In this document: piece after piece, positions 8,104 to 47,999 of the stretch
How positions within the stretch are numbered: position 1 is the stretch's first letter
How the letters are laid out: each line of letters starts with the position of its first letter
Source of the DNA: Anthoceros angustus
Lineage: Eukaryota > Plantae > Anthocerotophyta
Length of the DNA stretch: 64,000 bases
Reading direction: 5' to 3'
Assembly: GCA_010909165.1 (NCBI GenBank)
Contig: MU008165.1
Coordinates: 372,001 to 436,000 of the forward strand
Notes under the pieces: generated by a model
Told to the model about the DNA's origin: nothing
Database searches by the model: none
Seen by the model: the letters and a program-made list of their open reading frames with translations, nothing else
Program-made: the position numbers and the translations under genes

Positions 8104-9286
8104 CCGCCACTGATACCAACGGCTTGAATTGTCAGAGGACCGACAAGTATGGTAGTGCCTTCAGTAGCAGGCGTCAATGAGGAGAGGCCTGCACCAGTTT
8201 ACTGTTTTCAGCATTGGTTGCTGCTGCAATATTAGTCTAAATGATCCACCATTCCGGCCCCAATTTCAGGCGTTGTGCCCTATTCTGTCAATGCTGCTGT
8301 GCCACTGCAACGTCTTCACTGCCACAGTCGATGTACTGTCATCAACAGAATCCTTTGACTAATCCAGTTAACGGACTGTTACCATCCAAGAGGCACAAAT
8401 TCCAACAGACGCATCCCTCCATGAATCCAAACCCTTCTACATCGACTACCTCTTGCTGATTCTGTTCTGTCGACTTTCAGAAAGTTGCTGTTGCTCACCA
8501 TGTCGTCGGACGAGGAGACCAAGGGGAAGAGGAAACCACACCCTCCATGCAGCCACCACATAGCCAACTACACCCTATGTCCAGGTGCCCTCTCCTTGGA
8601 TCGTCCTGCCTGGAAGGACAAAGTCCGATTGGAAAAGCTTGCTCTCCTTCACACCAAAAACTTTCTGTTTGGCGCAAAGAAGAAACTCCCCGGCCAGAAG
8701 TAAGTAGCGGAAAGAAGCGCCTTCCTGGGGAGTCAGGGTAAAACGTAAGAGGTAACCCTAGCCCTAGTCTTCTACTGGAGGTAATCGCTCTTCTCTTTCC
8801 TGCTACACATGTATTGGCGCATAACCGTGTGTGCTAACTCCTGCCATGGTGGCTTGAATCACGCCCGGATGACGGCGAGGTGTAATCTAGCTCAAGCGGG
8901 ATGCTGCGCGAGCGGAATTGTACTAGAAAAATTTCTCTTTGAACTCTGAACTCACGTCCTGAAAATCAACAACAAAAATGTGACGGGCCTTGTGCTGCGA
9001 TTGCGATTCTGTTTGAATGGATCTGAGCTCTGAGCTTGTTCAAGTATGCAATTTTGTGTCCAAGGTTTGAAGAATTTCTTCAGGTCCTCATTTCATCCAC
9101 GTTTGTGCACCCCTGCTACGATTCAGCCATCCTTCATGTTGAGACATGATGCCCCAAGGCTGCCTGAGATTTCCTCTCGCATCCTCCCGCATTTTTCTTC
9201 CTACAATCTGGAAGGATGTGCTTGTTCTTTAAACCTGGGCATGATAAGAAGCGGTCTTTGCGTGTCAGAAGGAAGGCTTGGTTGTC

Positions 9287-11848
9287 ATGCTTCTGGCTTG
9301 GGGGTTTGCAACATGTAGCAGCCCCTCCTTGGGGTGGAGGATTGCTTTATCGGGTCCGTGCGTCCAAAACCAAGTCTACAACCACAGAACCCTAGAGTGT
9401 AAGGCGCGTCGATTTGGGCAGTATGATTTGAAGCAGAATTCAGGACTTTCTAGTCCATCTCCGCCGGGCATTGCAGCCAGAACAAGGCTTTGTAAAAATT
9501 GCAGATTACCCACCTCACGCCATTCCTTGACTGGTAGTAAGTCACAGCGCTCGCCAGCAGAATTGGGTCCATGGGAGGACGTTCGGAGCTTATGCCGGGA
9601 AGGACGTCTGCTGGAGGCATTGAATGCTCTGCAGATTGTGGAGCCGCAGGACAGTGTGGCTTCCCTGCAAATCTACGCGTGCCTTATACAAGAGTGCACG
9701 AAAAGGAGGGCCTTGGTTGAGGCCAGACGGGTGCGGGCCTTTCTGGCCAGCAATGGGCTTCTTCTGTCTGAGAGCTATCTGGGGAACTTGGCTGTCGACA
9801 TGCTGGTCAACTGTGGCAGCCTTTCAGATGCTCTGGAGGTCTTATGGCTGTTGCCCGACACCACAGCTCGGTCTTGGACAGCCGTAATCTCAGGGTTTTG
9901 TAAGGGTGGACAAGAACGGGATGCGCTCAGAATGTACAATCTAATGCAGGAGAGGGAGGTGGAGCCCAACAAATTCACCTTTGTCTGTCTACTGAAAGCC
10001 TGTGGATGCCTCGGTGACGTGGAACAAGGCAAAAGGATTCATGCTGATGTTGTGAGATTTGGATGTGAGTCTGATGTGTTTGTGGCCACCGCTTTGCTCG
10101 GGATGTATGCAAAATGTGGTAGCATGGCAGATGCACGCCTTGTGTTTGACACATTGCCTGAGCGTGATGTAGTTTCATGGAACGCTATGATTTCAGGATA
10201 TGCCCAGCAAAATCAGGGTGAGCAGGCTTTGCAGCTGTATGCTCAGATGCAAGTGGCAGGAGAACGGCCAAACGATCGGACGTTTGTCAGCGTGCTGAAA
10301 GCTAGTGCAAGCCTTGCGGCGAAGGAGTTATCCGAGTTGGTGGATGGGCAGCATGTGAAAGTAGGATGTCTGCAAAGGGGGAAGAGGGTTAATTTCGAAG
10401 CTGCTTGTGAGGGCTTTGATTCAAATGTATTTGTTGGTAACACTCTGATTGACATGTATAGTAGATGCGGAAGCTTGGTTGATGCTCAGCAGGTGTTTGA
10501 CACCCTATCTCACCGCACTGTGGTGACATGGAATGCGCTCTTAGCAGGTTATGTCCAGCAAGATCAAACTGACAAGGCACTGCAACTTTTTAGTGAGATG
10601 CAGAGGAAAGGTGTGAAGGCAAACTGTCGATCCTTCGTAAGTGTACTGAAAGCATGTGGAAGCAAGGTAACCACGGATGGCGCCATGGTTGTGAACAAGC
10701 ACTCAGTTAGCATCGGGTGCCTGCAGAAGGGGAAGGCCATCCATTGTGAAATTCTCCAATGTGGCCTTCAGCCCGATGTGTTTCTCGGGGCTACTCTGGT
10801 TGACATGTATGCTAAATGTGGCAGCATGGTGGACGCAGAGCATGTATTTGATCAATTACCTCAGCGTGATATCGTCACTTGGACAGCCATGATTGCAGGT
10901 TACACCGAGCAAGAACAGGGTGAACAGGCACTGAGCCTGTATGCAGACATGCAAAGGCTCGGAGTCCGACCAAACGAAGCGACCTTTCTCAGCATCCTGA
11001 AAGCCACCAGCCAAATCGGAGCACTGAATATATGTTCTCAAATTCACCATGATATCCTTGAAAGTGATGTGAAGTTCACCTCAAGCTTGGCAACCACCCT
11101 TATTCATGCGTACGGCAAGTGTGGAAGCTTGGTGCATGCTCAGGATGTATTTGATGCCTTGCTGCATCATGATGTCTACTGCTGGACTGCATTGATAGCA
11201 GGATACGCACAGCAAGGCGAGGGTTTAAAAAGCTTGCAATGCTTCACGCAGATGCTGCAGTCTGGTGTTGAGCCCGATGGTATCACTTTCTTGTCTGTCT
11301 TGGCAGCATGCAGCCATGCAGGGTTGGTTGAGGAGGGCCTCACCGTGTTTGAGAGTATGAGCAGGGATCATGGCATCACCAAGACGATTGAACATTACGT
11401 GAGTCTGGTCGATCTTCTTGGCCGTGCAGGGCTCTTTGATAAGGTGGGGGAAATACTTTCACAAATGCCTTTCAAGCCCAATATGGCTTTTTGGTTATCT
11501 CTGCTTGGTGCATGTCAAAAACACAACAACGTAGATCTTGGAAGGCGCGCATTTGAGGGCGCCGTACAGTTGGAATCAACACTAGGTGCACCATATGTAA
11601 TGATGACAAGCATTTATGTCCAGGCTCATATGTTGGACGATGCATGCAAGATAGAGCATATGAGACGAACTGCATCTCCGTGGAAGGTTCCTGGGTTGAG
11701 CTGGGTAGAGCACGATGATGCAATTCATGTATTTGTTGCTGGAGATTCAAATCATTCTGGAATTCAACACGTACAGTCAAAACTGGTTGATCTCAGCCGA
11801 TTGCTGGGTATGAAGGCATCGGATTCCAGCATGGGGATGAGGCTGTGA
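9287..11848 (+). CDS. PLS-class PPR protein, E/E+ subclass without DYW domain (organellar RNA-editing factor)
   Basis: Intronless ORF with first ATG at 9287. Repeated P/L/S motifs (DVVSWNAMISGYAQQ, TFVSVLKAC, VFVGNTLIDMYSRCG), E1/E2 (HYVSLVDLLGRAG, WLSLLGAC), PG box KVPGLSWVE and HVFVAGD. Stops before any DYW domain. Confidence 0.95.
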   Translation: MLLAWGFATCSSPSLGWRIALSGPCVQNQVYNHRTLECKARRFGQYDLKQNSGLSSPSPPGIAARTRLCKNCRLPTSRHSLTGSKSQRSPAELGPWEDVRSLCREGRLLEALNALQIVEPQDSVASLQIYACLIQECTKRRALVEARRVRAFLASNGLLLSESYLGNLAVDMLVNCGSLSDALEVLWLLPDTTARSWTAVISGFCKGGQERDALRMYNLMQEREVEPNKFTFVCLLKACGCLGDVEQGKRIHADVVRFGCESDVFVATALLGMYAKCGSMADARLVFDTLPERDVVSWNAMISGYAQQNQGEQALQLYAQMQVAGERPNDRTFVSVLKASASLAAKELSELVDGQHVKVGCLQRGKRVNFEAACEGFDSNVFVGNTLIDMYSRCGSLVDAQQVFDTLSHRTVVTWNALLAGYVQQDQTDKALQLFSEMQRKGVKANCRSFVSVLKACGSKVTTDGAMVVNKHSVSIGCLQKGKAIHCEILQCGLQPDVFLGATLVDMYAKCGSMVDAEHVFDQLPQRDIVTWTAMIAGYTEQEQGEQALSLYADMQRLGVRPNEATFLSILKATSQIGALNICSQIHHDILESDVKFTSSLATTLIHAYGKCGSLVHAQDVFDALLHHDVYCWTALIAGYAQQGEGLKSLQCFTQMLQSGVEPDGITFLSVLAACSHAGLVEEGLTVFESMSRDHGITKTIEHYVSLVDLLGRAGLFDKVGEILSQMPFKPNMAFWLSLLGACQKHNNVDLGRRAFEGAVQLESTLGAPYVMMTSIYVQAHMLDDACKIEHMRRTASPWKVPGLSWVEHDDAIHVFVAGDSNHSGIQHVQSKLVDLSRLLGMKASDSSMGMRL

Positions 11849-17363: not shown

Positions 17364-20300
17364 CTAGTGTGGCCAGTAGTCTTCGAGGATGTCCTTGTTG
17401 AGGCCTTTTTGGCGGCAGGCAGTGCAGACCCAGGCGACCTCGCGGGGCTCGCCGCGGGTGTAGCGGACGTGGTAGAGCTCGAAGAGGCTGGAGATGAGGT
17501 CCATGCGGGGGCGCAGAAAGTCCTGCAGGCAGAGCCAGGCGTCGCTGAAATCGGCGGGCGTGATGCAGGCGGGCTCGTTGGCGCGGATGTCGTGCAGGAG
17601 AGTGTCCATGGCCATGCTGCTGGAGGCCCCCAGCACGGGGAGCGGGAGGGGCACGGCGGGCAGCCCCGCGCGCAGCATGATGTAGAGGAGCTTTGCTGCG
17701 CCCATGGCGATGGGCCGCAGCCGCCTCCACTTGCCGTCCTCCAAGGTCATCTCGCACCCCTCCTGCTGCGCCACGTAGTGCTTCCCGCTGCGCTCCTCGC
17801 ACATGAAGTGCAGGCGGACGGATTTCCCCACCCGCATCACGGCAGAGAAGCGCTGCAGCATGCCGACATCGCTGTCGGTGAAGAAGGGCAGGCGGGGCAT
17901 CTTCCGCTGGTGGAACTGCGCCGAGAAGCCCATGACATCGTCCATCCTGTCCATGAGGGTGCGAAGCATGTGTTCCTGCAGGGACTGGATTCCCTTCACC
18001 TCGGGCAGGATGGCCTTCATCAACACCTTCTGCTCGTCCATGGCGGCCGCGGCTCGGTCCAGCTGCTTCGTAACCCTCAGGAAGTTCTCCACCATGACCT
18101 CCAGATCCCCGAAGGAGTGGCGTTGCATTCCCGCGTCCATGCTCCTGCGAGAATACTGGCTCCTGCTGCCGCTTTCCACCCGGCGCAACAGCCGGAGCTG
18201 CCGCTCGCTCAGGCTGATGCGGTTTTGCAGCTTGGAATCCGGATTGTTCTGCATGCTGCGGAGCATGACCTCATCGGCCGCCTCCTCGATGTGGAGCCGC
18301 TGCTGCGACAGGATCTGGAGCTTCCGGTCGATGGCCTTCATTAAATCCCTGGCTCCGAGCAGATCCACCGCGCGGTGGCTTCCCTCGGGGAGGCCCGCCT
18401 GCGGCTCCTCTGGGAAGGAGTGCTCGTGCTCCAGGGACGCTGCCAGGGAGAAGATCTCCTCGTGGTCCCTGTACAGGATGTCCTCGTCCATGAGCTGGTG
18501 CATGAGCTCCGCCTTGAGGCTCTCCACCAGCACGGCCTGTTGCTCCCTGTGCGCGCAAAGAGTGAGGTTTTTGACGCACTCGGGGCGCAGAATCCCTTCC
18601 ACCAGCTCCACTCCCGGGCACGCCCTCGGGCAGAATGCGTGCAGCTCCCGCACCACGTGCTCCCGCACGAAGTCCATGGTCTGGATCGGGGACTTGCTGG
18701 ATCGCACCAGCACGTCCACATACTCCCCGACATCGCCTTTGCACTCCACCAGGATCTCGATGCCGTCCACCAGCATGGAGATGAGGTTGCGCTCGTTCTT
18801 GTACTGCTCCGGGAAGATTCCAAGCTTCGAGACGAGCCGATTCCGCAAAATCACCTGAATGAATGAAGAGGAACAACGAGGCAAGCAAGAACGGCTTCGG
18901 CAGCTGAGAATATATGCAAGAACCATAACAGGAGGACACTGAGGATTCATGTCAGTCAGCCTGGACTTGCAGCGGACATCGCAAATTTCTGCCTAATGTC
19001 CATCCAACAGTAGGGGATGCTTCAAGGATTGTGGAAGCGGCAATCGAGAAAGCGTCAAAGAAAACCTATGAGGAAGTGCAAATTATGCAGGAAAGCAGAT
19101 CAGGAAGTGCAAACTATGCTGAAAACCAGATGAGGAACTGCAGGAACTGTTATGCAGGAAATCAGATCAGGAACTGCAATTGATCAAGAAGCAAGAAGCA
19201 AGATCAGTACACGAAGGAACGATGTCAGGAACATGCAGCGGACAGGACAACATTCCACCTATCGAACAGAACGGCATCCATCTTCCAGCATACAGCGCAG
19301 CACAGAGACCAGCGAACATTGAAAGCTTTTGCGGTGCACCTGAAATCTTGGAAAGAAACCGGCTGTGAGGACAGTTCGGTGGGTGTCTGCGCATTGCAGA
19401 CGGCGGCCGATGTAGATGCAGGTAATGTTGTCCTTGTGTGCAAGGGGCCATGTGAGCTGCCTCAACCCCGACGAGGCCTTCTCGTTGTGATCCTCCAGGG
19501 CGCTGGGAACGAAGAAGCGGCTGCTGTCCTGATCAGCGTTTGCGGGATCAGGCTCCTCGTAGCACAGCTCCAGCTTGAGCATTAGGGTTATGAGATCCTG
19601 CGTGGTGAACCCGGAGTACTTGCTGCTTCTCAGGAACTCCTCCAGGACCAGCTCCAGGTCCTGCTTGTAGACGAAGCCGTCGAATCTCTTGTCGACGAGG
19701 CCTTGGAACTGGTCTCCCAGCCTGACGAGGCGGCCGAGGAACACATGCGCCAGCCAGTTGGGATTGGCGACCATGAATTTGAGGTCCGGGATATGGATTA
19801 TGCTGCCGACGTCGTGGAGGTAGGCCACAACCGCTTCCCTGCTCTCCCGCACGTCTTCCGAGACGTCTTCCCCCGGGTGGTGGCCGTGCACCAAGGGCTT
19901 CAGGGCTTCCACCTTGCTGGCGCAGAGGGAGTAGAATTCATCCTCCCTCAGGATGGGGTGCGTGCTGTGCGCGGACGCCCATTCCGCGAGAAGCAGGCTC
20001 ATCTGAGTGCACGCCTCGGGCAGGAGCGGGAGCTCGTGCGAGAGCAGGTCTCGGAAGCAGGCGAAGACATGGTCCATGAGCGGACGGACGCTCTTCCCCG
20101 ATAAGGAATTCACCGCGTGTATGGTCGGCGAGAGATCCAGCACTCCCTGGAACTTCTCCCTCATGGTGTCCACCGTCTCGCTGGCCCAGTCCACTATCCT
20201 CTCCTGCGTCCACCCCGACACCCTGTCCAGATGGCTCAGCACCACGCACACCTGCGGGGGAATGTGGCTGGCGCTCCTGCTGGAGGCAATGACGCGCAGC

Positions 20301-22155
20301 CAGTCCTGCAGCTCCCTCTCCAGATCGGTCTCCGCCTCCATCTTCACCGCCCCGCTCTGGTGGTCGAACAGGCTGAAGACGAACACGAACACGCACGGCT
20401 GGTTAATGTCGGGGAAGAGGTAGTCGTGGAGAGTGTGGACCTCCGCCTGCCCCGGCATGTCCCACACCAGAATCTGCATCTCTGCGTCATCCCTCAGCAG
20501 CTCCACCTCGGATGGATATCCCTTGCTCTTGCTCCGGCTCATCCACGGCGGGAAGCAGGTGGACTGCTTGGTCTGCACCAGGGATTTCCCTCTGAACATC
20601 ACTCTGTGCAGCCAGGAAGACGAGCTCAGGCTGCATCTCACCATGGATTTCCGCAGCGTGGTTTTCCCTGCAACAAACGTACCATGCATGGCATGAATTT
20701 GGACAACATGAACACAATGCAACCGTTACGTCATTCAATGTCTCATCTTACCAAGATGGTGATGATGGTGGAAATGGATTGGGTACCTGCCATGCCCGAG
20801 CCGCACATGAAGAGGCGGCCTGCCTTGGGCGCCACGAACCGCAGCTTCTCCCTGAGCACAGCCAGGTATGCGGCCTGGTTAGCATTCCGCCTGAGAGCCT
20901 CCTTCTCCGCAGCCTCCTTTCCGTCTGTCTTGCAACTGGCTGCATCATCGCCGACGACATCGTCCCTGGAGGCCTCCACATGCAGCATGTCCATCAGGGT
21001 ATGCTCTTGCAGGAGCTCGATGATCCACTTGGCCTTGTTGTTCCACGGGGTGCACTCCAAATTGATGGTCTTGAGCGAGGAGTTCACCTCCAGCAGCTCC
21101 ATGAGCTCGGTGAAGAGCGAGTTATCCAGGCCCTTGCAATTGTGCAGATCGAGGTACTCGAGCGTGGTGTTCCTGTGCAGCGATCTGAAGATGTTCCGCC
21201 ACTCCACCCTCGAGAACCTACTATGCCGCAGCGAGAGAGATCGTAGCGAGCTGTTGGTGCGCAGCATCCTGGCTGCCGTCGCACCCAAACCCTTCTCGTC
21301 CGCCAGCACCAGATCCAAGGTGGTGATGGAGGTGTTGTGCATCATGTCGAAGTGGGACGAGAGAATAGCATTATTATTATTCTCATCCCCGGCCCCCCCC
21401 GGGTTCGCCAGCGCCCGGAGGAGCGTGGTGAGCGTTCCGGGAGCCATGCCATTACAAGAGGCCGATCCTTCGTCTCCAACGAAGAGCTCCTTGAGGGAAG
21501 TGTTGTTCACCAATCCCCTTGCCAGCTGCTGCGCGCCGGCCCGCCCCATCCCGATGTCGTACATCATGAGCGTGCGGAGGCCGGTGAACTGCGCGCTCAG
21601 CACCTGCGCGATGCTCTTGGCCCCGCCGTCTCCGAGCTTCCGGTTTCCCGACACATCGAGGTAGTGGAGGCTGGAGTGCTCGTTGGAGAGCATGGCGTCG
21701 GCGATGTGCGCCAGGCCGGGCGCGGTTAACCCTACCCCGTTCAGCAGCAAAACCTGCAGGCTGCAGCTGGAGAGCAGGACGCGCGCGAGATGGCGGCAGG
21801 CGGCCTCGGATCCGAAGCCCGGGTTGTAGCTCAGCCGCAGGTCCACCAGGACGGGGTTGGAGCGCAGGCCTTTGCAGAGCGTCTCCACCTCCGCCTCCCG
21901 CGTGATGTCGCACAGAGACAGGTCGAGCGACATTAGGGTTGAGCAGGCCCCGACCAGCTCCAGCACGCGCAGGCGGAGGTGCAGCCAGGCCGGGCCCTTG
22001 CCGTGCCCCGGGTGGTTGAAGGCGTCCCCGTACTGCTCCTCCGTGAGGTCGGGCAGGATGCGCATCGGCACCGCCGGGGACGCCATCGCCAGCTCCTGCA
22101 TCACCTGCCGCAGCGCCGGCGGGGCGTCGTCTTCCTCCCATCCGCGCTCGGCCAT
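17364..22155 (-). CDS. TRN1: TORNADO1-like ROCO protein (RI-type LRRs, ROC GTPase, COR-like region), about 1395 aa
   Basis: join(complement 20787-22155, 19340-20667, 17364-18854) = 4188 nt, in frame. RI-like LRRs. P-loop GSGMA|GKTT spans intron 1. G3 WDMPGQ. TRN1-like motifs ELQDWLRVIASS, GSIIHIPDL, LKLELCYE, FFPRFQ|VILRNRL, MPRLPFF and LHFMCE. Possibly a paralog rather than the ortholog. Confidence 0.9.
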
Positions 22156-33788: not shown

Positions 33789-36700
33789 CTAAAAGAGATG
33801 TTGGGTTTCTTGAGGGTGATTAAGTTCACTCAAAATTAGCCTAGACCATACTATATCCTTGGAAATAGATGTTAGTACTCTATATTGATTCAAGACTAGA
33901 CAAGGCAATGGTAGGTGTTTCTTACTCGACCATGATATTGGAGCTCCTCCAAGAAGTAAAACATAACGATACGGATTTTGAGTATCGGGATCACCAGATA
34001 ATCGATCGGCATATGCCGTAAGTGTTAATGTTTTGATTGCTGGTGTATGCTTAAATGTCACCGCTTTGCATAGTCCCTTTAAGGTATCGAAAAATACGCT
34101 TAATCGACATCCGTGTTGATGTCGTGGTTCTCCAAAAGCGTGAGCGAGGCCGACTTCAAAAGAAATATCGGTCTAGTAAAATTGCTTAAATATATGAGAG
34201 TGCCGACATGTCGATATGGGACGGATGCCATCTCCATTTTCTCTTGAGCACTCTTAGGACTCATATCGAGTAAGCGATGCCACTAGCAAAGGTGTGGGTG
34301 CAGCTTTGCATCTTCCATTCCAATTTTGCTAAACTCTCCTTTATATACTTGGTTTGAACTATGCTCACTTTTTATTACTCCTATCGCGGATAATATTTAC
34401 ACCAAGTGCATAATTCATTTCTCCGGTCGGTCATTTCATATAATGTCCAAGCCATGCTTTATCTCATTAGGAGAATAAGAGAGTTTGTTGCCATAAAGAC
34501 GTCATCGACGTATAATAGAAGGTAAATATATCATTTCCTTAAGGTAAATATATAAGCAAGCATCGCCTTTACTTTGCTTAAATCCCTTATTCGAGAGTTG
34601 TATATGGATGGTCAAGTTCCAATTTTTGCCGGATTGCTTGAGTCCATATAGACCCTTGATCAATTTACATACTAAATGCTCCTTGCCTTTTACTTCATAA
34701 CCCTCAGGTTGCTTCATGTATATTTCTTCTTTCAAGCGCCCATACAAATATGCTGTCTTCACATCCATCATATGAAGTTCAAGATCGTACTGGGCACATA
34801 TAGCGAAGATCATGCGAAGAGTGGCAAACTTGGCTACAGGAGCATAAGTGGCCCAAGGTATATAGTCTAGTCCGAGGATTTGGGTAAAACCTCTAGCAAC
34901 TAGGCGTGCTTTATACCTTTCCACGGATCCATCTCCTTTTCTCTTTATCTTAAATACCCATTTGCTGGTTACTATTTTTCTACCCTTAGGAGGTTCAACT
35001 AATTCCCATGTAGAATTACTAATGAGGGAATTATACTCGAATCTACTGACTTCCTTCCATAGATGTTTGGAGGAGAAGAGAAGGCTTGTTTTAGGGTAAG
35101 AGGCTCTTCTAAGTCTCGTGGGCATACTTGATTATAAAGGGACTCGGGAGAATTAGAATCAGGAAAAATAGCAAGGTATCCCAAAGGGGTTCTTTCCAAC
35201 CAGCAGGGCCAGAGATGAGTGGACGTGATCTAAGGTTGTACCTTGGTGCAGGTGTGTCTTCCACAGGAACTGGTTCATCTTCTTGTTCTAAGGGATCCAT
35301 TTCTTCAGTATCATCAGCTTCCAACTGATCATTATCATCTTGAACAGGAGGTATAGCATCTTCTGAAATGGCCTCAAGGGGATCAGATGAAGGTGGAAGA
35401 GGCTCCTCCTCCTCCTGCAGCATGGGGTCAACAGAAGGAACACGAGGAGTAGGGACAAGGAAAGGAAGGGGATTAGGATCATCAAATGTAGAAAAATCAT
35501 TAGCATCATCGGAGTCAACGACTTCAACTCCCACCGTTGGAGAAAAGAGGTAAGACTCATGGAATGTAACACTCGAGCATAAAGAAGTTGTCTTGTTGAA
35601 GGGTTATATAACTTATACCCTTTAATGCCTTGATATCCTATGAAAAGATACTTGGCTGCCTTGGGATCCAACTTCTTACGTAATGCTTTAGGAATGAAGA
35701 CATATGCCGGTGATCCAAAAATACGAAGATGATCAATGGAAGGTTTCTTGCCAATAAACGCTTCATAAGGTGTCATGCCTTGTACTGCTGATGTAGGTAA
35801 GCGATTGATAAGATAGGTTGCTGTAAGAAGGGCCTCAGCCCAATAAACCTTAGGCAACTTGGCCTGTGTTAATAAGCAACCTGTTATCTCTTGTAAACGC
35901 AGATTTTTATTTTCTGCTATCCCATTTTGTTGAGGAGTATAGACAACAGTGAGTTGTTGAGCAATACCTTCTGCTCGACAAAACTCCTGAAAGTGATTAG
36001 ATGTAAATTCACCTCCATTGTCAGAACGTAATGTTTTCAGTTTGCAATCTGTAAGTCTCTCGGCCCATTTCATATAATCTTTGAAAAATTGAAAAGCATC
36101 AGACTTGTTTTGCAAGACATAGGAGGAGACAAAACGGGAAAAATCATCTATAAAAGTCAAAAAATACCTACTTCCACTAAAGGAAGATGTAGATAGAGGT
36201 CCACAGATGTCTGTATGCACTATCTCTAAAGGTTTCTTTGCCCTTTGTGGAGATTTGTTTTTAAAAGGCTCTTGGTGACGCTTGGTGAGGACACAAGTTT
36301 CGCACCAGGATAAATGCCCAACATTTGCAAGACAGGGGTTTCTGTAAAAGTTTCCCTTAGACATCTGGGTGAGTTTTTGACTATTTGGGTGACCAAGGCG
36401 ACAATGCCATAACATTGATGGAGGGGGACTTTGTGGAGAAGAACTGGTGACATAAGCAGATTGTTGACCTCCTACTAGGACAGACAATCTATAAAGGCCA
36501 TCTTCTAAAGTACCACTACAAATAATATGATTGCTATCACCTACATGAGAGAGAAAGCAACTATCTCGTAAAAGGGTCACCGCATGGAATGGGTTTGACA
36601 AATACTTGCAACGATAATAAATTCTTGCACATTAATGGAACATGGAGTACTTGGTGGAGGTGAAGGACTTGTCCGAATCACATGTCAAGACAATGTAACC

Positions 36701-40882: not shown

Positions 40883-42598
40883 ATGCAGTGGTGTGAAATG
40901 GAATCGTCAAGCAATCTAGACGGTGATGAAGTTGGCGGAGAGATGGGTTGTTGCTCATTGGCTTTTGGGTGGAGAAGGAGACGTCAATATGGGCATCCGA
41001 CAAGTGAGAAGGAGACGTCAATATGGGCATCCGACTTGGTCGTCCCTGCAACTGATTCGTCAAGTGCAGTCGGTTTAAAGAGTAAGCAGGAAGACATGCA
41101 GGACGAAGTCGGGGGAATATTAATTGACGAGCAGTGTGAGCAGGAGATGTCAGAGGTCAAGTGCATCTTTTGTGAGCGAATTGTTCGCTCTTCCGGTGCT
41201 GAGAGGCAGAGGCTCAAAGAATTGGAGCCCATGTCGCTCATGGAGCTTAAGCGCAAGCTTTTAATGATCGGCATGGATATTTCCTGGTGTGAGCAAAAGA
41301 GTGACTTTGTGCAGGTTCTAAATCTTGCTTCGGCTGTTTGCTCGGAATCGGAGTGTAGGGAGCTGTTGAAGCTGACATGTTCGCAGACTTTGGGATGTGG
41401 GCATCGCTGTCGAGGAGTTCGAGCAGAACGTACTTGCCTCCCCTGTCTAGAGGTGATATCGATTGTGCTAACCCAAATGACACTTCTTGACCCATTTTTC
41501 CTCAAGCCACGATAGTGAAAATGCAATGGTATGGCGGAGAACTGATCTGACACCCTTTCCTCCTTCTCATAGGATGGCTGTCACTCAAATCCATGTGCTG
41601 CTCAGAAGGTCTTCACGTCTCGGGACGAGCTCTGTGCGATATGTATGCTGGATCCTGTTAGGCAAGCACCTGCCATACTGCTGACCTGCGGGCATATCGT
41701 GCACTTCCATTGTGCAAAGCTGAAGATTAAATCGGGATTTCCAGGCCCCGAAATCAGCTTTGGTTTCCTCGACTGTCCAATCTGTTTGCAGGTCATGAAT
41801 CATCCCACTTTGGAGTCTTTTGTAAGGGGACACGACATGCTGAGAGGGCGGGTAAGACATGAATGGTAACAAAGAGGATGCATGACACGTTCTTGGGGAA
41901 GCAATACTCGTTCATATCATGCAAAGAGATCTCAGTTTGAAACATTCGACTGTTCAGGTTAGGCAAATGGTAAAAGAGCAGCTGAAGACGGAACACATCA
42001 TGCAAGGAAAGCAACAAAAGCAGCTTGAGATGGAAAAGGAAGATGAGGGCCTCGGGGTAGAAATAACCGAGGAAATGGTGATTGCTGCCATGAAGAGGTA
42101 TCAATATCATGTGTGCTTTCAGTGCACGAAGCCATATTTTGGTGGTATTCGAAACTGCAGAGCGGAAAACGAAGGGTAGGTACTTTCAACATCTCTTGTT
42201 CGATTAAGATCTTCTGGAGTCGCTTGCGAGCTTGTACTAATCATGCTTGATTATGCAGGGAAGCCGACCATGATCCGCGCGAGCTTATGTGTGGCCACTG
42301 CGTTGCTGCAGCAGCTGGCCACGGACGATGTGGGGTAAAAGGCCATGGCACTGATTACATAGAATACAAGTGCAGATATTGCTGTTCCGTAGCTACCCGT
42401 TTTTGCCTTGGATCTGTTCATTATTGTGGCGCTTGTCACCTTCTTAGAGAAAGATGTGTGGATCCCAAGAAATTTATGCGGACCTGTCCAGGCCCTGATT
42501 CTTGCCCTCTGGGCTTGGCCCATGCCCCAAATGGCGAAGAGGCATGCCTTGGTTGTTCTCTCTGTCGTATACAACGACAAGAACAGATGTCACCGTAA
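40883..42598 (+). CDS. MYCBP2/PHR C-terminus-like RING-Cys-relay E3 ubiquitin ligase, short paralog (SAP-like, ZnF, RING-H2, tandem-Cys domain)
   Basis: Exons ~40883-41452, 41573-41851, 41958-42175 and 42259-42598, all GT-AG and frame-preserving. Motifs CSQTLGCGHRCRGVRAERTCLPCL, ELCAICMLDPVRQAPAILLTCGHIVHFHC...GPEISFGFLDCPIC, RYQYHVCFQCTKPYFGGIRNC, DPRELMCGHC, HGTDYIEYKCRYCCSVATRFC and CPLGLAHAPNGEEACLGCSLCR. Start codon uncertain. Confidence 0.9.
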
Positions 42599-42659
42599 AC
42601 GGTAGTAGAAATAATTGGAAAGTAAATACGAGCCTTAGGCTCTCCATCTCCATTTCTCC

Positions 42660-42930
42660 ATACAGAACAAGCCCCTTTTGGCCGAGCCCTTTGCTGTGCA
42701 TGCCCCTTTTGGCCGAGTCCTTCTGTGCATGCCCCTTTTGGCCGAGTCCTTGTTGTGCATGCCCAGCAATGCCCACCAGGGCAGGTGTGAGACAAGCAAA
42801 AGTAACAACAGCAGCCAAAATGAGGCCAGCCTCCTCCATTTGTTCCATACACAACAGGGCCCCTCTTGGCCGACTCCTTGCTGTGTGCATGCCCAGCAAT
42901 CAGGGCGGTCCGTGTCAAAAACCTCACTCT
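42660..42930. repeat. Short tandem and dispersed repeats (CCCCTTTTGGCCGAGTCC..TGTGCATG, ~30 bp)
   Basis: Three adjacent units at about 42672-42765 and a fourth at about 42860-42900. Confidence 0.75.
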
Positions 42931-43540
42931 GTTATCCAGCAGTCCTCTTTCAACGATCAGTGTGTGTAGCTGCCTGCCCTTCTGTTTAAGTCTTAAGGGA
43001 GATAGCCAAAATCAGGCCCTCCTGCTCCATTTGTCCGTACACAACAAGTCCGAGCCCTTGCTGGACATACCCCGCAACCAGCACAGTGCATGTCACCCAC
43101 CACATCCTTCGTGGCCAAGCTGTCAAAAACCTGGTGCGCATTGTTCTGTTCACCACATTTTGCATACTACCCACCTTGCAGGAGCCAAGAAACAAGCTAA
43201 AGGAATGCCACCGTCCAACATATCACACTGCACTCTTCTGCCAGATTCCAAGTCGGCAGCCAGTGCACAAGCTTGAAGGGCAGCTACAAACACATGAAAC
43301 TGTATCCGCACCTCATGGTACAGCTGTATGACCTCATTAGGTCTCCCATGCTTCGAGACATTATGGAAAACCACATGAAGGCGCAAGATACGGTTCCTAC
43401 CCAAGCATGACTGTGAGATCATAACTCGTCGCGCCACAAGGAAATCCTCATTCAGTAATGTTCCTGTTATGAGACCCATGAATTTTAGTTGCCTGGTCGA
43501 ATTCACATTGAGACGAACGTGGGTCATAAGGGAAGACGTA
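42780..43540 (-). pseudogene. Degenerate PLS-class PPR gene fragment
   Basis: Frameshifted motifs: FHNVSKHGRPNEVIQLYHEV, FVAALQACALAADLESGRRVQCDML, KVGSMQNVVN...RFLTAWPRRMW and VLVAGYVQQGLG...YGQMEQEGL. Confidence 0.75.
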
Positions 43541-44201
43541 AGATAGCTTGGCGGCTGATTTCCGCTTCTTACAGGAAGTGTCCGGAAACACCCTTCATAT
43601 CTCCAAGAGGATTTTTATAGACCGAGTTGTCTTAGCCACTGTTTCGGTCCTATCCAAGGCCACTAACAATGGCACTTGTAGCCTGCAAGAGCGACAATGT
43701 GAAACAGGCACCGTCGCGATACAGTACCAGTCTCTCTAGCGTGTTGAAGTGGATTCCATTTTCGCTGATTGCATGCAATAGTTTCTGGAGGATTAATCAC
43801 TTGTGTCCTCCCTTGTCCCAACTGCAATCCCTCACTTCAGTGTCCTCCCTTGTCCCAACTGCAGTCCCTCAAGCTCCTCGGGAAGGCCGACAATGTATGA
43901 TAGCGGCATATAGGGCTTCCAAGCTGGAGCCGAATCCGTGGATTGCAGTGGAGGTTAGCTGTGTTTGGTCACCTGTTTGCGAATTCCATCTCAAAGCCGG
44001 GAGGTAACGAGAATTCGAGCAGGCAAACATCAGGAACAGCCCGAAACAGTAGGCGAGCTGGATTGGGAAACTTCCCGTTTATGGACATGTTATCGGGAAA
44101 CCTAGCCTAGGTGGAGTATGGGCCGGTGCATCTTCCTGGACGGGAGAGGTCAAAGGGAACTCGTTCTATATTGAGCATGCTCTTTTGTGTTGTGAAGTCT
44201 C

Positions 44202-46929
44202 ATGGACTGGCTTCACCTTCAAGGTGAAGCTGTGGTTCAACAATTGCAGCATCCGAGTGAGGTTTACAAGAAGAGGGCACGATTGCAGCTAACCTTTGTG
44301 CGGGGTGAGTACGAGGATGAGGATGGAGACACTGCCACCGGGTTCTTGTTAGCTGATGTCCCTCCCAGGGCCGGGGGTACGAGATTTGGCTGTTGTTCCC
44401 CTAACACAGATAGAGTGTTTTCACATGCAGCAGGGCTAGGTGAAGTGGATGCTTCTGCTGGGTGTGAGATGGGATCGTTCTGCAGTCGGGATGTTGGGGA
44501 ATCCACCGCACACAGCTCTCGCTCCGCCTTTCGCATCCCGTCTTCTAGCAGGAAAGATTTACGTTTGCATCCGGACAGAGGGGATTCATCATCTGCAGCT
44601 AATTCGACAGTCGCAGTGGACTTGAATCGTAAGCGGCATCACGGGCAGCACGAAGTGGGGGACATACCTTTACATGATGAAGAGCTTCCGCAGGACGAAG
44701 CGGGGAACATACCTTTGCATGATGGAGAGCTTCCGGAATCATCTCTACATGATGAAGAGCTTCCGGAATTTGTCGCTGTGCAGGATGATGAGCTGCATGC
44801 AGTCCACTATATATCGGATGAGGAGATGACGGATGCGCAGTTTACATGCGATCATTGTTGCCAGAGTTTGTCGATGGCTTTGATTGGCGCCACGCTCAGC
44901 TGTACGTGTCTCTTCTGTGTTCCTTGTTTACGGCAACATATTGATGCTACTCTGGAAAGAGCCTTCGTAAGTTGCTCCAACCAATCATCAGATGTGAAGG
45001 TTACATCCGAACCTAGCACGTCTGCAGCTACATCTTCTGGTGCCAATGGGCAACATGCAGAAGCGTCCTCCAGCTCTGCTGCCTTCGAATGGATAACATG
45101 CCCCACTCCTAGTTGTGGTGGTAGTTTGAACCTGTTAGATGCACAGAGTGTGGCCCCTGAATCTTTCAGGAAATGGGAGGACAAGGCCAGTAGCGAATTT
45201 CTGGACCAGAGTACCTCTTTTGTACACTGTCCAGGGTGTGGAATCCTTATAGAGAAGGTTGCTGGCGAATTGCCTCAAAATGGGGCTCCAGAGAACGGTG
45301 GGATCCGCCTTTCTAAAGCTGCTTTGCGTCACAAGGCTGTAAATCGGTTTCGTTGTCCTATGTGCACAGTTGATTTTTGTGGCAAATGTATAAGAAAGCC
45401 CTATCACGAGGGGAAGACCTGTGAGCAGTATGAGGAGGAGATATCAGCTGTAAAGTGCATCTTTTGTGAGGGAATTGTTCGTTCTTCTAGTTCTGAGAGT
45501 CGGAGACTCAAAAAATTGGAGTCCATGTCTGTTAAACAGCTCAGGGACGAGCTTGAAAGGAGTGACGTGGATATTGCCTGGTGTGTGGAAAAGGGAGAAC
45601 TAGTGAAGGTGCAGAATCTTGCTTCTGCTGTTTGCTTGGGAAAGGACTGTAGGAAGCTGCTGAAGCTTTCATGTTCTCGGATTTTGGAATGTGGGCATCG
45701 CTGTGGAGGAGTTCGAGCAGAACGTACTTGCCTTCCCTGTCTAGAGGTGATTGTGCGGACCCAACTCTCGGGTACAGAAGTTGGGTCCCAATTTCTGTAC
45801 CCGACTTCTGTACACTCTTTTTCTTTGTCGTAGTGAGAATGCTTTGGCATGTCTGACAACTGATAGGACACCCTTTTCCTACTTTCCACAGGATGGCTGT
45901 CACTCAAATCCAGGTGCTGGTCAGAAGATCTTGACATCCGGGGACGAGCTGTGTGCTGTATGTATGGTGGATCCCATTAGACAAGCACCTGCCATACTGC
46001 TGACCTGTGGGCATGTGGTGCACTCGCAGTGTGCAAAGAGGAAGATTGATGAGGGGTTTCCAGGCCCCGAAATCAGCTTCGGTTTTCTTGAGTGTGCACA
46101 ATGTTCACAGGTCATGGAACATCCAACTTTGGGGCCTCACGCGTGGAAGCATGAGAAGCTGAGATTGCTGGTGGGAATTGTTATCCCGGATGTTCACATT
46201 CTCGGTGAAGCAATACCTGTTCACATCATGCAAAGAGATCCTCAGCTTGAGACATTTGGCTGTGCAGGTTAGGCAAAGGGTAGGCGAGAGGCTCAAGATT
46301 GAGCGAATGGAAGAAGAGCGGCGCAAGATGGGGGCTTCATCAAAGCCTTCAAAGTGGAAGGTAGACCAGTTGAGGGCAGACAAGGCAAACGTAGAAGTAA
46401 CCGAGGAGTCGGTCAGTGATGCCATGAAGAAGTACCAGTATTACGTCTGCTGTAAGTGTAAGGAACCATATTTTGGTGGTATGCGCGACTGTAGAGCGAG
46501 AAATGAACGGTACGTGACGGGCAAAACACATCATTCTCTCTTGATAATTTCAAGATTTTCTGGTCTCGTTGGCAAGTCTATACTAATGATGCTTGATTGT
46601 GCAGGGAAGACGGTTATAATCCGGGCGAGCTTATGTGTGGCGGCTGTTCTGCAGCCCTTGTTGGTAAGGGAAAATGTAAGGTAGCAAACCATGGCACTGA
46701 TTACATGGAGTACAAGTGCAAGTATTGCTGCTCCGTGGCCACTTTCTTTTGCTATGGAACCACCCACTTTTGCACCTCTTGTCATCGTACGAGAGAAAGA
46801 GGTATCGATCTGAAGCAGGGCATTGTTAAATGTAAAGGCCCTCAGCACTGCCCTTTACGGATCGAGCATGCCCCAAATGGCGAAGAGTCATGCCTTGGCT
46901 GCTCTCTCTGTCGTATCCAAGGGCAATAA
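44202..46929 (+). CDS. RING1-IBR-SAP-like-ZnF-RING-H2-tandem-Cys protein (RBR/RCR hybrid E3 candidate), about 796 aa
   Basis: Exons 44202-45746, 45892-46170, 46268-46509 and 46605-46929. RING1-like CDHC..SCTCLFCVPC..CPTPSC. IBR CPGC..CPMCTVDFCGKC..PYHEGKTC. MYCBP2-like CGHRCGGVRAERTCLPCL, GPEISFGFLECAQC, YQYYVCCKCKEPYFGGMRDC, ELMCGGC, HGTDYMEYKCKYCCSVATFFCYGTTHFCTSCH and CPLRIEHAPNGEESCLGCSLCR. Start codon uncertain. Confidence 0.92.
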
Positions 46930-47999
46930 GGATGGCACTTGGGAGAAACAATGCTCTGTTGTTGAAGACCCTCAACTATTTCAAGTGCATGGTTATCGTA
47001 ATGCTTGTTGCAGCTGTCATCCTGTTACCATCCAGCCTGGCCACAGAACTTGCCGACAAAGCCACTTTGAAGTGGTTCATTATGGTGCCCGTTATTCACC
47101 AACGAGCAGTATGCCTGCCTCTCACTCGCAATTGAATGTTGCTTTCTGCAGACCGGACAGCAAAGCACCCAGGTCTCCATCCCTCCTAAAGCTGCCCACT
47201 TCCCTATCTGCGCATCAAGATCCTCCCATCCAATGGCCTACCTGGCCTTGACAAGGCGTCTCCGACCGGACAGCAACGCACGGTTTCACACGATCAGGGT
47301 CAGGGGTGGGAGCCCCGAATCCGGTCAGTCGTGCCGTTCATTCATGTATTGTTCAACTTCTACGGCTTATTCATACCCATTTTACGCGGAAGCTGCAAGA
47401 CAACGGAAGACAGATTCTTATAATTTTCTGCAGGCTGAAAAATAATGCACCATACAACATTCAACGGTAGGCTGTCTCCCTTATCATTTTTCACTCTCTA
47501 GTTGGATGCGAGACTTTATAGACTTTATAGGGGAGTCCCATAATTTTTCACTGTCTAGTACTCATCATGTATTTTTCATATCAACTCGGCCATCTTAATA
47601 CCTACTTATTGTATAAATTAGTGGAAGCTTATGGCCATCTTAATACCTACTTATTGTATAAATTAGTCGAAGCTTATCTCGTTCATCCTATTCGTAATAG
47701 GATATAGGGGGTTATAGGGTAGATTAGTGCAGGGGCACGCCCCTGCGCCTGGTGCCCCGTCGTGGGTTGTCCCCTTTTGCCTCGGGGTAGATGGGATTTC
47801 CCATCTGGTTCTTTAATAAAGTCTCCACATTCCCTATTTTGTAATTGGTTTTAAACTTATTAATTTTTACTCATTTTTCCTATAAATAGATCAACTATTT
47901 AATTGAAATCATACAATATATAGCTGAATTAAGCATTTGGTTTGACCACCCTATCGAACACATCCATTACCTCCTCTATCTTACCTCCACATGCATAAT

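What the first reader, a model, noticed from the sequence alone, without database searches (positions are those of the whole stretch)
45640..46929. A plant RING-Cys-relay (MYCBP2/Highwire-type) E3 ligase module with both catalytic cysteines intact
Seen: the spliced product aligns colinearly with the human MYCBP2 C-terminus across the pre-RING Zn finger, the RING-H2 (GPEISFGFLEC vs GPRITFGFISC) and the tandem-cysteine domain. Known: RCR ligases transfer ubiquitin from E2 to Cys4520, then to Cys4572, then onto Thr/Ser hydroxyls, with Glu4534 and His4583 implicated; this class is characterised only in animal PHR proteins. Here GGMRDC (TGT 46490-46492) corresponds to C4520, the Glu 14 residues later to E4534, ATFFC (TGC 46750-46752) to C4572 and CTSCH to H4583. 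Inference: this plant has a stand-alone non-lysine (ester) ubiquitination system lacking the large RCC1/PHR/DOC N-terminus. I do not know of an equivalent in angiosperms.
Basis: partly seen in the sequence, partly recalled or inferred. Interest (0 to 1): 0.95.

Follow-up and report, generated by a model that had tools for sequence, protein, structure and literature searches.

The report
Plant MYCBP2-type RING-Cys-relay ligase gene
A transcribed four-exon gene of a seedless land plant encodes a ubiquitin ligase whose C-terminal third is a clear, catalytically intact relative of the animal MYCBP2 "RING-Cys-relay" module, but it belongs to a widespread, already database-labelled and biochemically unstudied eukaryotic family rather than being a one-off.

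Summary
Window 44202-46929 (+) holds a four-exon gene of 796 aa. An RNA contig identical to the window, and transcripts about 94% identical from three related species, confirm all three introns.

Residues 476-796 align colinearly with MYCBP2: 40% identity and E 2e-64 against a vertebrate MYCBP2. MYCBP2 (5o6c/6t7f) is the only solved structure that matches strongly. A confident model of the last exon matches only the MYCBP2 tandem-cysteine domain in the PDB.

The interpretation needs trimming in three ways:
- **Not stand-alone.** A degenerate RING1, an IBR and a SAP-like segment precede the module.
- **Not unique.** A profile search gives 732 strong hits. Most of the best 150 are 450-1000 aa, and 105 of 163 carry an IBR. 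They come from mosses, lycophytes, ferns, charophytes, green algae, amoebae and a sponge.
- **Already labelled.** Databases call such proteins "RCR-type E3 ubiquitin transferase" or "highwire-like" (Physcomitrium).

No seed-plant member appeared. Ester chemistry is inferred only, and one position next to the catalytic His differs in land plants. Verdict: new member of a known kind, moderately interesting.

The parts
44202..45746 (+). Exon 1 of gene A (aa 1-515): acidic N-terminus, RING1-like, IBR, SAP-like segment and pre-RING zinc finger
   Evidence: ORF from ATG 44202. The N-terminus is homologous to P0001 and P0002. The donor after 45746 is confirmed by RNA contigs.
44814..44975 (+). Degenerate RING1-like zinc finger (aa 205-258; C216, C219, C234, C236, C239, C242; the last ligand pair is missing)
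   Evidence: No Pfam RING hit here. A family sub-profile matches aa 205-258 at 5e-20, but the window's own gene was a row of the alignment the profile was built from, so that match is expected by construction. The same sub-profile hits 23 of 163 relatives. Platysulcus has a full Pfam C3HC4 RING at the equivalent place; in Protostelium Pfam found the IBR but no RING there.
45087..45437 (+). IBR domain (aa 296-412)
   Evidence: Pfam PF01485, E 1.2e-7, 32.1 bits against a cutoff of 24.3, aa 324-407. An IBR-like domain lies upstream of the RCR in 105 of 163 relatives.
45438..45626 (+). CxxC motif plus SAP-like helical segment (aa 413-475)
   Evidence: Weak, sub-threshold Pfam hits to the RNF34/RFFL SAP domain (E 0.0085). 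The segment is conserved in gene B and in land-plant homologues.
45627..45746 (+). Pre-RING zinc finger (aa 476-515, CGHRCGG...CLPCLE)
   Evidence: Colinear with python MYCBP2 residues 4366-4406. Its Cys and His are 83-100% conserved in 166 modules.
45892..46170 (+). Exon 2 (aa 516-608): RING-H2 (C536...C586, nt 45952-46104) and start of the linker helix
   Evidence: phmmer 7.9e-14 to 5o6c residues 8-72. Pfam RING models match below their curated cutoffs (best zf-RING_5, 26.7 bits against 27.9). Both splice sites are confirmed.
46268..46509 (+). Exon 3 (aa 609-689): linker with a lineage-specific insert, first TC zinc site (C669, C672) and the mediator loop with the upstream catalytic Cys C683 (46490-46492)
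   Evidence: phmmer 1.3e-4 to 5o6c residues 115-146, where C74 of the query aligns with C143, which is C4520. The Cys is present in 165 of 166 modules.
46605..46929 (+). Exon 4 (aa 689-796 plus stop): rest of the TC domain with E697 (46627-46629), downstream catalytic Cys C738 (46750-46752) and H749 (46783-46785)
   Evidence: phmmer 3.3e-25 to 6t7f residues 149-256. The AF2 model has pLDDT 88.7. Foldseek finds only 6t7f and 5o6c, E 3.4e-8, TM by query 0.70. Residues are conserved in 163-165 of 166 modules.
40883..42598 (+). Gene B, a tandem paralogue (exons 40883-41452, 41573-41851, 41958-42175, 42259-42598; 468 aa) without RING1-IBR
   Evidence: 60% identity to gene A over 393 aa and 335 bits to the RCR profile. 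All catalytic residues and zinc ligands are kept. It is sister to gene A in the tree. No RNA contig in run X1.

Best explanation
Gene A (44202-46929, 796 aa) is a functional, expressed member of the RING-Cys-relay (RCR) class of ubiquitin E3 ligases. It belongs to a short 'IBR-RCR' subfamily that is spread over many eukaryotic groups. In green plants the subfamily was inherited vertically from streptophyte algae to seedless land plants.

The mechanism is inferred by homology with MYCBP2:
1. The RING-H2 (C536-C586) binds an E2~ubiquitin thioester.
2. Ubiquitin passes to C683 on the flexible GGMRDC mediator loop.
3. Ubiquitin is relayed within the molecule to C738.
4. Ubiquitin is discharged from the C738/H749/E697 site onto a substrate nucleophile. 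This is most likely a Ser or Thr hydroxyl, as in MYCBP2, but that is not shown.

The N-terminal RING1-like, IBR and SAP-like part probably provides substrate or ubiquitin binding, or regulation, in place of the RCC1/PHR/FBXO45-binding scaffold of animal PHR proteins.

Shown: gene structure, transcription, homology, fold of the esterification half, residue conservation and phylogenetic distribution. Inferred: every catalytic step and the acceptor chemistry.
For: - **Splicing and transcription:**
- **PDB sequence matches:** MYCBP2 RCR is the only strong match, at 7.9e-14, 1.3e-4 and 3.3e-25.
- **Identity to vertebrate MYCBP2:** 40%, E 2e-64, colinear.
- **Catalytic residues:** C683, C738 and H749 are conserved in 163-165 of 166 modules, E/D at 697 in 146 of 166, and all zinc ligands are kept. 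The 14-residue spacing from C683 to E697 equals that from C4520 to E4534.
- **Fold:** the model of the window's own exon 4 (pLDDT 88.7) matches only 6t7f and 5o6c. The moss RCR model matches 5o6c at E 4.9e-17.
- **Family size:** 732 representatives at E<=1e-30. The module sits at the extreme C-terminus in 145 of 163, and an IBR lies upstream in 105 of 163.
- **Vertical inheritance:** the tree nests land plants inside charophytes in species-tree order.
- **ORF constraint:** indels in orthologue transcripts within the CDS are multiples of three, 3 and 15 nt.
- **Mechanism reference:** PMC9527308 section 13.
Against: - No biochemical data exist for any non-animal RCR protein in the papers searched.
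- The position aligned with the vertebrate Phe three residues after the catalytic His is Arg in 10 of 11 land-plant sequences. The residue after C738 is Tyr rather than Phe. The acceptor pocket may therefore differ.
- The Glu position is Asp or Gln in some land-plant homologues.
- I could not fold the window's whole RCR module, because no reference exists for the spliced protein. In the moss homologue model the C-terminal half of the TC domain was of low confidence.
Confidence: 0.75

Rival explanations
1. The protein is a working Cys-relay E3 with an acceptor preference different from MYCBP2. It could modify lysine, serine rather than threonine, or a non-protein hydroxyl or amine. 'Ester ubiquitination in plants' would then not follow from the homology.
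For: The pocket position aligned with the vertebrate Phe after the catalytic His is Arg in 10 of 11 land-plant sequences and variable in other short RCRs. Y739 replaces Phe, and gene B changes three further residues around the second Cys. MYCBP2's threonine preference is ascribed to a hydrophobic pocket (PMC9527308).
Against: The Cys-His-Glu triad and its neighbours (FFC.GTTHFC..CH) are almost unchanged from animals to plants. Which residues line the pocket is my recollection of Pao et al. 2018, which is not held here.
Confidence: 0.25
2. The TC domain is only a structural zinc module, and the protein acts as an ordinary RING (or RING1-IBR-dependent) E3 or scaffold without a cysteine relay.
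For: No activity data exist. The RING alone could promote E2 discharge.
Against: Two non-zinc-ligand cysteines plus His and Glu are kept in 163-165 of 166 modules across eukaryotic supergroups. That is hard to explain without catalysis.
Confidence: 0.06
3. The locus is a contaminant, a recent horizontal acquisition from an animal or protist, or a decaying pseudogene.
For: MYCBP2-like genes are best known from animals. The paralogue gene B has no transcript contig in run X1.
Against: - Three short GT-AG introns are spliced in RNA of the same organism and of three relatives.
- The tree follows streptophyte phylogeny, with 95% support for the land-plant clade.
- Neighbours are a PLS-type PPR-E gene and copia elements.
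- The ORF is intact and the gene is expressed.
- A complete homologue lies on a genomic contig of another sample.
Confidence: 0.02

Closest known systems
MYCBP2/PAM/Phr1, Highwire, RPM-1 (animal PHR proteins); RCR module solved as PDB 5O6C and 6T7F
   Same: The layout is colinear: pre-RING zinc finger, RING-H2, linker helix and tandem-cysteine domain at the extreme C-terminus. Identity is 40%. Both catalytic Cys, the His, the Glu and all zinc ligands are kept, with the same 14-residue spacing from the first Cys to the Glu.
   Different: The protein is 796 aa rather than about 4600 aa. It has no RCC1-like, PHR, DOC/APC10, Myc-binding or FBXO45-binding regions. It has a RING1-like, IBR and SAP-like N-terminus instead, a 25-30 aa insert in the linker, and Arg in place of the Phe three residues after the catalytic His.
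Short 'IBR-RCR' proteins of other eukaryotes: Physcomitrium patens XP_024395653.1 ('highwire-like'), Selaginella LOC9631788, Ceratopteris KP509_12G090100, Chara braunii A0A388LR61, and UniProt entries F0ZCM3, Q55BN2 and D2UXL3 named 'RCR-type E3 ubiquitin transferase'
   Same: Same overall architecture and length class. Identity is 39-44% over about 600 aa to land-plant members. The window protein sits in the same clade.
   Different: No relative found here exceeds about 47% identity, so this is a separate land-plant lineage. It has a lineage-specific linker insert and a tandem paralogue lacking RING1-IBR. None of these relatives has been characterised either.
RBR (RING-between-RING) E3 ligases such as Ariadne/HHARI and parkin
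   Same: A RING1-like finger followed by a bona fide IBR, and a transthiolating catalytic module at the C-terminal end.
   Different: There is no RING2/Rcat domain; its place is taken by a complete RCR module with a RING of its own. RING1 has lost its last ligand pair in land plants.

Membership tests
RCR (RING-Cys-relay) E3 ligases, EC 2.3.2.33 | RING domain directly upstream of the TC domain, homologous to the MYCBP2 RING | tested here: met
   phmmer 7.9e-14 to 5o6c residues 8-72. Pfam RING models match below their curated cutoffs. Eight ligands are conserved in 164-165 of 166 modules.
RCR (RING-Cys-relay) E3 ligases, EC 2.3.2.33 | Tandem-cysteine (TC) zinc-binding domain fold | tested here: met
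   phmmer 3.3e-25 and 1.3e-4. The AF2 model of the window's exon 4 (pLDDT 88.7) matches only 6t7f and 5o6c, TM by query 0.70. The first half was tested only by sequence and in a moss homologue model.
RCR (RING-Cys-relay) E3 ligases, EC 2.3.2.33 | Upstream catalytic Cys (C4520) on a mediator loop | tested here: met
   C683 in GGMRDC aligns with C4520 and is present in 165 of 166 modules.
RCR (RING-Cys-relay) E3 ligases, EC 2.3.2.33 | Downstream catalytic Cys (C4572) with the His (H4583) and Glu (E4534) triad | tested here: met
   C738, H749 and E697 align with them. They are conserved in 163, 163 and 116 (+30 Asp) of 166 modules.
RCR (RING-Cys-relay) E3 ligases, EC 2.3.2.33 | E2-to-Cys transthiolation, Cys-to-Cys relay, and esterification of Thr/Ser | not testable with these tools
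   This needs biochemistry. No published data on non-animal members were found.
[quoted passage not shown] | Giant scaffold with an RCC1-like domain, two PHR domains, a DOC domain and the FBXO45/FSN-1 binding region | tested here: not met
   The protein is 796 aa. Pfam finds only an IBR, a weak SAP and RING in it. None of the 18 PHR-length relatives carries the IBR.
RBR E3 ligases | RING1, IBR and RING2 (Rcat) triad with the catalytic Cys in RING2 | tested here: not met
   The IBR is met (PF01485, 32.1 bits against 24.3). RING1 is degenerate and has no Pfam hit. No Rcat is present; only a CxxC remnant at aa 419-422.

The most novel reading that the evidence does not exclude
The short IBR-RCR protein is an active ubiquitin ligase that forms esters on non-lysine acceptors. 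It would be present in seedless streptophytes and many other eukaryotic lineages. It, rather than the giant animal PHR scaffold, would be the common and perhaps ancestral form of the RCR class. Seed plants would have lost it. Its RING1-IBR part would work with the RCR module as a hybrid RBR/RCR machine.
Probability: 0.4. Interest if true: 0.65.

Novelty: new member of a known kind. Interest (0 to 1): 0.45.

Why it matters
RCR is the newest mechanistic class of ubiquitin E3. In the reviews read here its mechanism and biology are described only for animal MYCBP2 (PMC9527308, PMC9120709, PMC13061254).

This locus and its relatives show that the complete catalytic module is old and widespread. It usually sits in a 450-1000 aa protein behind an IBR. 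It occurs in tractable plants such as Physcomitrium, Ceratopteris and Selaginella, but apparently not in seed plants.

This makes hydroxyl-directed ubiquitination in plants directly testable. It also offers small, soluble RCR enzymes for mechanistic work.

It is not a new kind of system. Automatic annotation has already flagged the family, so the value lies in pointing to an unexploited family rather than in a discovery unique to this window.

Tried and rejected
1. **Whole-module fold.** No reference exists for a spliced protein, and I did not type it. I folded a moss homologue (pLDDT 71, C-terminal half poor) and the window's exon 4 alone with 76 aligned rows (good).
2. **The window's own protein in the databases.** It was not returned. 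The best relative is 47% identical.
3. **Primary RCR papers.** Pao 2018 and Mabbitt 2020 are not held. A search on residue number 4573 gave only noise. The identity of the threonine-pocket residues therefore rests on memory.
4. **Organism from the neighbouring PPR gene.** Inconclusive. The best named hits are lycophyte, conifer, fern, Ginkgo and liverwort proteins at 35-43% identity.
5. **One wasted literature search** combining MYCBP2 with moss and lycophyte names.
6. **Swiss-Prot AFDB fold search**. No hits. This is uninformative for MYCBP2 itself, which is too long for that library, and only weak evidence against a TC fold in reviewed Arabidopsis or rice proteins.
7. **Contamination or horizontal transfer.** Rejected.
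8. **Pseudogene.** Rejected for gene A and left open for gene B.
Full report
**1. What is in the sequence**

The finding's coordinates (45640-46929) are the 3' part of a larger gene. An ORF opens at ATG 44202. Comparison with homologues and splice-site inspection give four exons: 44202-45746, 45892-46170, 46268-46509 and 46605-46929. The CDS is 2391 nt and encodes 796 aa. The introns are 145, 97 and 95 nt, all GT..AG.

Public RNA data confirm the model. A 3601-nt transcript contig of run X1 lies on 43900-47400 with no mismatch and skips exactly these three introns. Contigs of three related organisms (B, C, D), about 94% identical, skip the same introns. Within the coding sequence they differ only by in-frame indels of 3 and 15 nt. 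After the stop codon, indels of 1, 4 and 9 nt appear. The gene is therefore real, transcribed and constrained as an ORF.

**2.

Each C-terminal exon was searched alone against all PDB chain sequences. MYCBP2 RCR (5o6c/6t7f) was the only strong match:
- RING exon: 7.9e-14.
- Exon 3: 1.3e-4.
- Exon 4: 3.3e-25.

The remaining hits are isolated RING domains at E of 8e-4 or worse, and chance-level matches.

Counting along the printed alignments, taking 5o6c chain residue 1 as 4378, gives four correspondences:
- C683 (TGT 46490-46492) = C4520.
- E697 (14 residues on) = E4534.
- C738 (TGC 46750-46752) = C4572.
- H749 = H4583.

Against a full-length vertebrate MYCBP2 (P0025, a python protein), the window protein aligns colinearly from the pre-RING zinc finger (aa 476) to the C-terminus. 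Identity is 40% over 326 aa, E 2e-64.

Pfam has no model for the TC domain. It finds RING models at aa 535-585, all just below their curated cutoffs.

**3. Fold**

The spliced protein has no reference in these tools, so I could not fold the whole module of the window.

A model of the Physcomitrium-cluster homologue's RCR region (mean pLDDT 71) is confident for the RING and linker but poor for the C-terminal half. Its only PDB hits are 5o6c (E 4.9e-17) and 6t7f.

I then folded the window's own exon 4, which contains E697, C738 and H749, with 76 aligned relatives. Mean pLDDT was 88.7 and pTM 0.80. Foldseek against the PDB returns only 6t7f and 5o6c: E 3.4e-8 and 9.8e-8, TM by query 0.70, 48-49% identity. 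The next hit has E above 4. The refutation criterion 'no structural match to the TC domain' is not met.

**4. Rest of the protein**

Upstream of the RCR module lie four parts:
- An acidic, poorly conserved N-terminus.
- A RING1-like finger with six of eight ligands (aa 205-258).
- An IBR domain that passes Pfam's threshold (PF01485, 32.1 bits against 24.3, aa 324-407).
- A CxxC motif followed by a segment weakly similar to the RNF34/RFFL SAP domain.

So the module is not stand-alone. There is no RCC1, PHR or DOC region.

**5. Relatives and distribution**

A word-indexed search with the RCR part of a moss homologue found named relatives in Ceratodon, Diphasiastrum, Ceratopteris, Selaginella, Mesostigma, Closterium and Cymbomonas.

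An exhaustive profile search used the zinc finger, RING and TC of 16 homologues against 1.84 billion cluster representatives. It gave 2979 hits at E<=1e-3, 1905 at E<=1e-10 and 732 at E<=1e-30.

I analysed 163 proteins that carry the module. They comprise the listed best hits, earlier homologues and two cluster members:
- 118 are 450-1000 aa and only 18 exceed 2000 aa (the PHR type).
- The module ends at the C-terminus in 145.
- 105 carry an IBR-like domain upstream, and none of the PHR-length proteins does.

Name look-ups add Chara, Chlorokybus, Platysulcus, Protostelium, a sponge (Sycon), Psilotum, Pteridium, Micromonas and Physcomitrium patens.

Across 166 aligned modules the two catalytic Cys and the His are present in 163-165. 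Glu or Asp is present in 146, and every zinc ligand in 83-100%.

A tree of the modules recovers land plants as one clade (12 rows, support 95). Chara and Closterium come next, then Mesostigma and Chlorokybus. The window's two genes are sisters inside the land-plant clade. This is the pattern of vertical descent, not contamination or transfer.

No seed-plant protein appeared among the named hits, nor in the land-plant clade's tree. The Swiss-Prot fold search gave no significant hit at all. This suggests loss in seed plants but is not proof.

Other first-stage notes on this genome point to a land plant with flagellate sperm, possibly a hornwort. I could not confirm the lineage. The neighbouring PLS-type PPR gene only says 'land plant'.

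**6. What is already known**

The papers searched describe the RCR mechanism only for animal MYCBP2. These include PMC9527308, PMC9120709 and PMC13061254. I found no paper on a plant or algal RCR.

Databases, however, already label the family outside animals:
- UniProt names 'RCR-type E3 ubiquitin transferase' (F0ZCM3, Q55BN2, D2UXL3).
- 'MYC binding protein 2, putative' (L8H7M3).
- 'E3 ubiquitin-protein ligase MYCBP2' and 'highwire' for two further non-PHR-length entries.
- NCBI's 'E3 ubiquitin-protein ligase highwire-like isoform X1' for Physcomitrium patens, and JGI's 'E3 ubiquitin-protein ligase MYCBP2'.
- One paper mentions a Dictyostelium 'mycBP2/Highwire-like protein' in passing (PMC6743453).

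The window gene is therefore a new member of a known, automatically recognised but experimentally untouched family.

**7. Mechanism and its limits**

By homology the RING should bind E2~Ub, C683 should take ubiquitin, C738 should receive it, and the C738/H749/E697 site should discharge it. Conservation of two cysteines that are not zinc ligands across eukaryotic supergroups argues strongly for catalysis.

The acceptor chemistry is the weak step. MYCBP2's preference for threonine is ascribed to a hydrophobic pocket (PMC9527308). In land-plant sequences the position of the vertebrate Phe three residues after the catalytic His is Arg in 10 of 11. The residue after C738 is Tyr in the window's gene. 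My assignment of these positions to the pocket rests on memory of a paper I could not read. My estimates:
- Relay-type activity: about 0.75.
- Hydroxyl selectivity: about 0.5.

**8. Paralogue**

Upstream lies gene B (40883-42598, 468 aa). It is 60% identical to gene A and lacks RING1 and IBR, but it keeps all catalytic residues and zinc ligands. dN/dS between the two genes is about 0.48. No transcript contig of gene B is present in the one run of the same organism, so its status is open.

**9. Verdict**

The gene is a new member of a known kind. Interest is moderate. Its value is that it shows the short IBR-RCR form to be the common one, and that it offers a route to test non-lysine ubiquitination in plants.

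Noticed in passing
window 40883-42598 (+): Tandem paralogue (gene B, 468 aa) of the RCR gene without RING1-IBR. All catalytic residues are kept, but several residues around the second Cys are changed (ATRFCLGSVHYC). There is no RNA contig in run X1.
   Followed up: partly
window 42600-43000: A short repeated element just downstream of gene B. Hundreds of short RNA contigs at 90-95% identity give summed depths in the thousands to 100,000 in all four runs. It looks like a dispersed or tandem repeat that is abundantly transcribed.
   Followed up: no
window 9278-11845 (+): Intronless 856-aa PLS-type pentatricopeptide repeat gene with an E motif (Pfam PPR_2 4e-81, E_motif 3.8e-6). The best named relatives are only 35-43% identical (lycophyte, conifer, fern, Ginkgo, liverwort).
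   Followed up: partly
window 19259-22152 (-): Adjacent long ORFs with an LRR match above Pfam's cutoff and a sub-threshold COR-A match (C-terminal of Roc). They may be part of a Roco-type gene like those other notes report in this genome.
   Followed up: no
window 35288-36598 (-): Copia-type integrase ORF (gag-pre-integrase, rve and SH3_retrovirus domains).
   Followed up: no
window 43900-44201 and further upstream: The gene A transcript contig runs unspliced at least 300 nt upstream of the start codon, and by its length about 250 nt beyond 43900. This is an unusually long 5' leader.
   Followed up: no
window 46330-46420 (aa 629-657 of gene A) and the equivalent in gene B: Both paralogues carry a charged insert of 25-30 residues between the linker helix and the TC domain. 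It is absent from the other land-plant homologues in the family alignment.
   Followed up: no
L001 1793-4407: A 6.4-kb genomic contig from another sample (SRR33208241) carries a complete homologue. Identity is 44% overall and 60% in the last exon, which lies in a different reading frame after a gap of about 95 nt at the equivalent position.
   Followed up: partly
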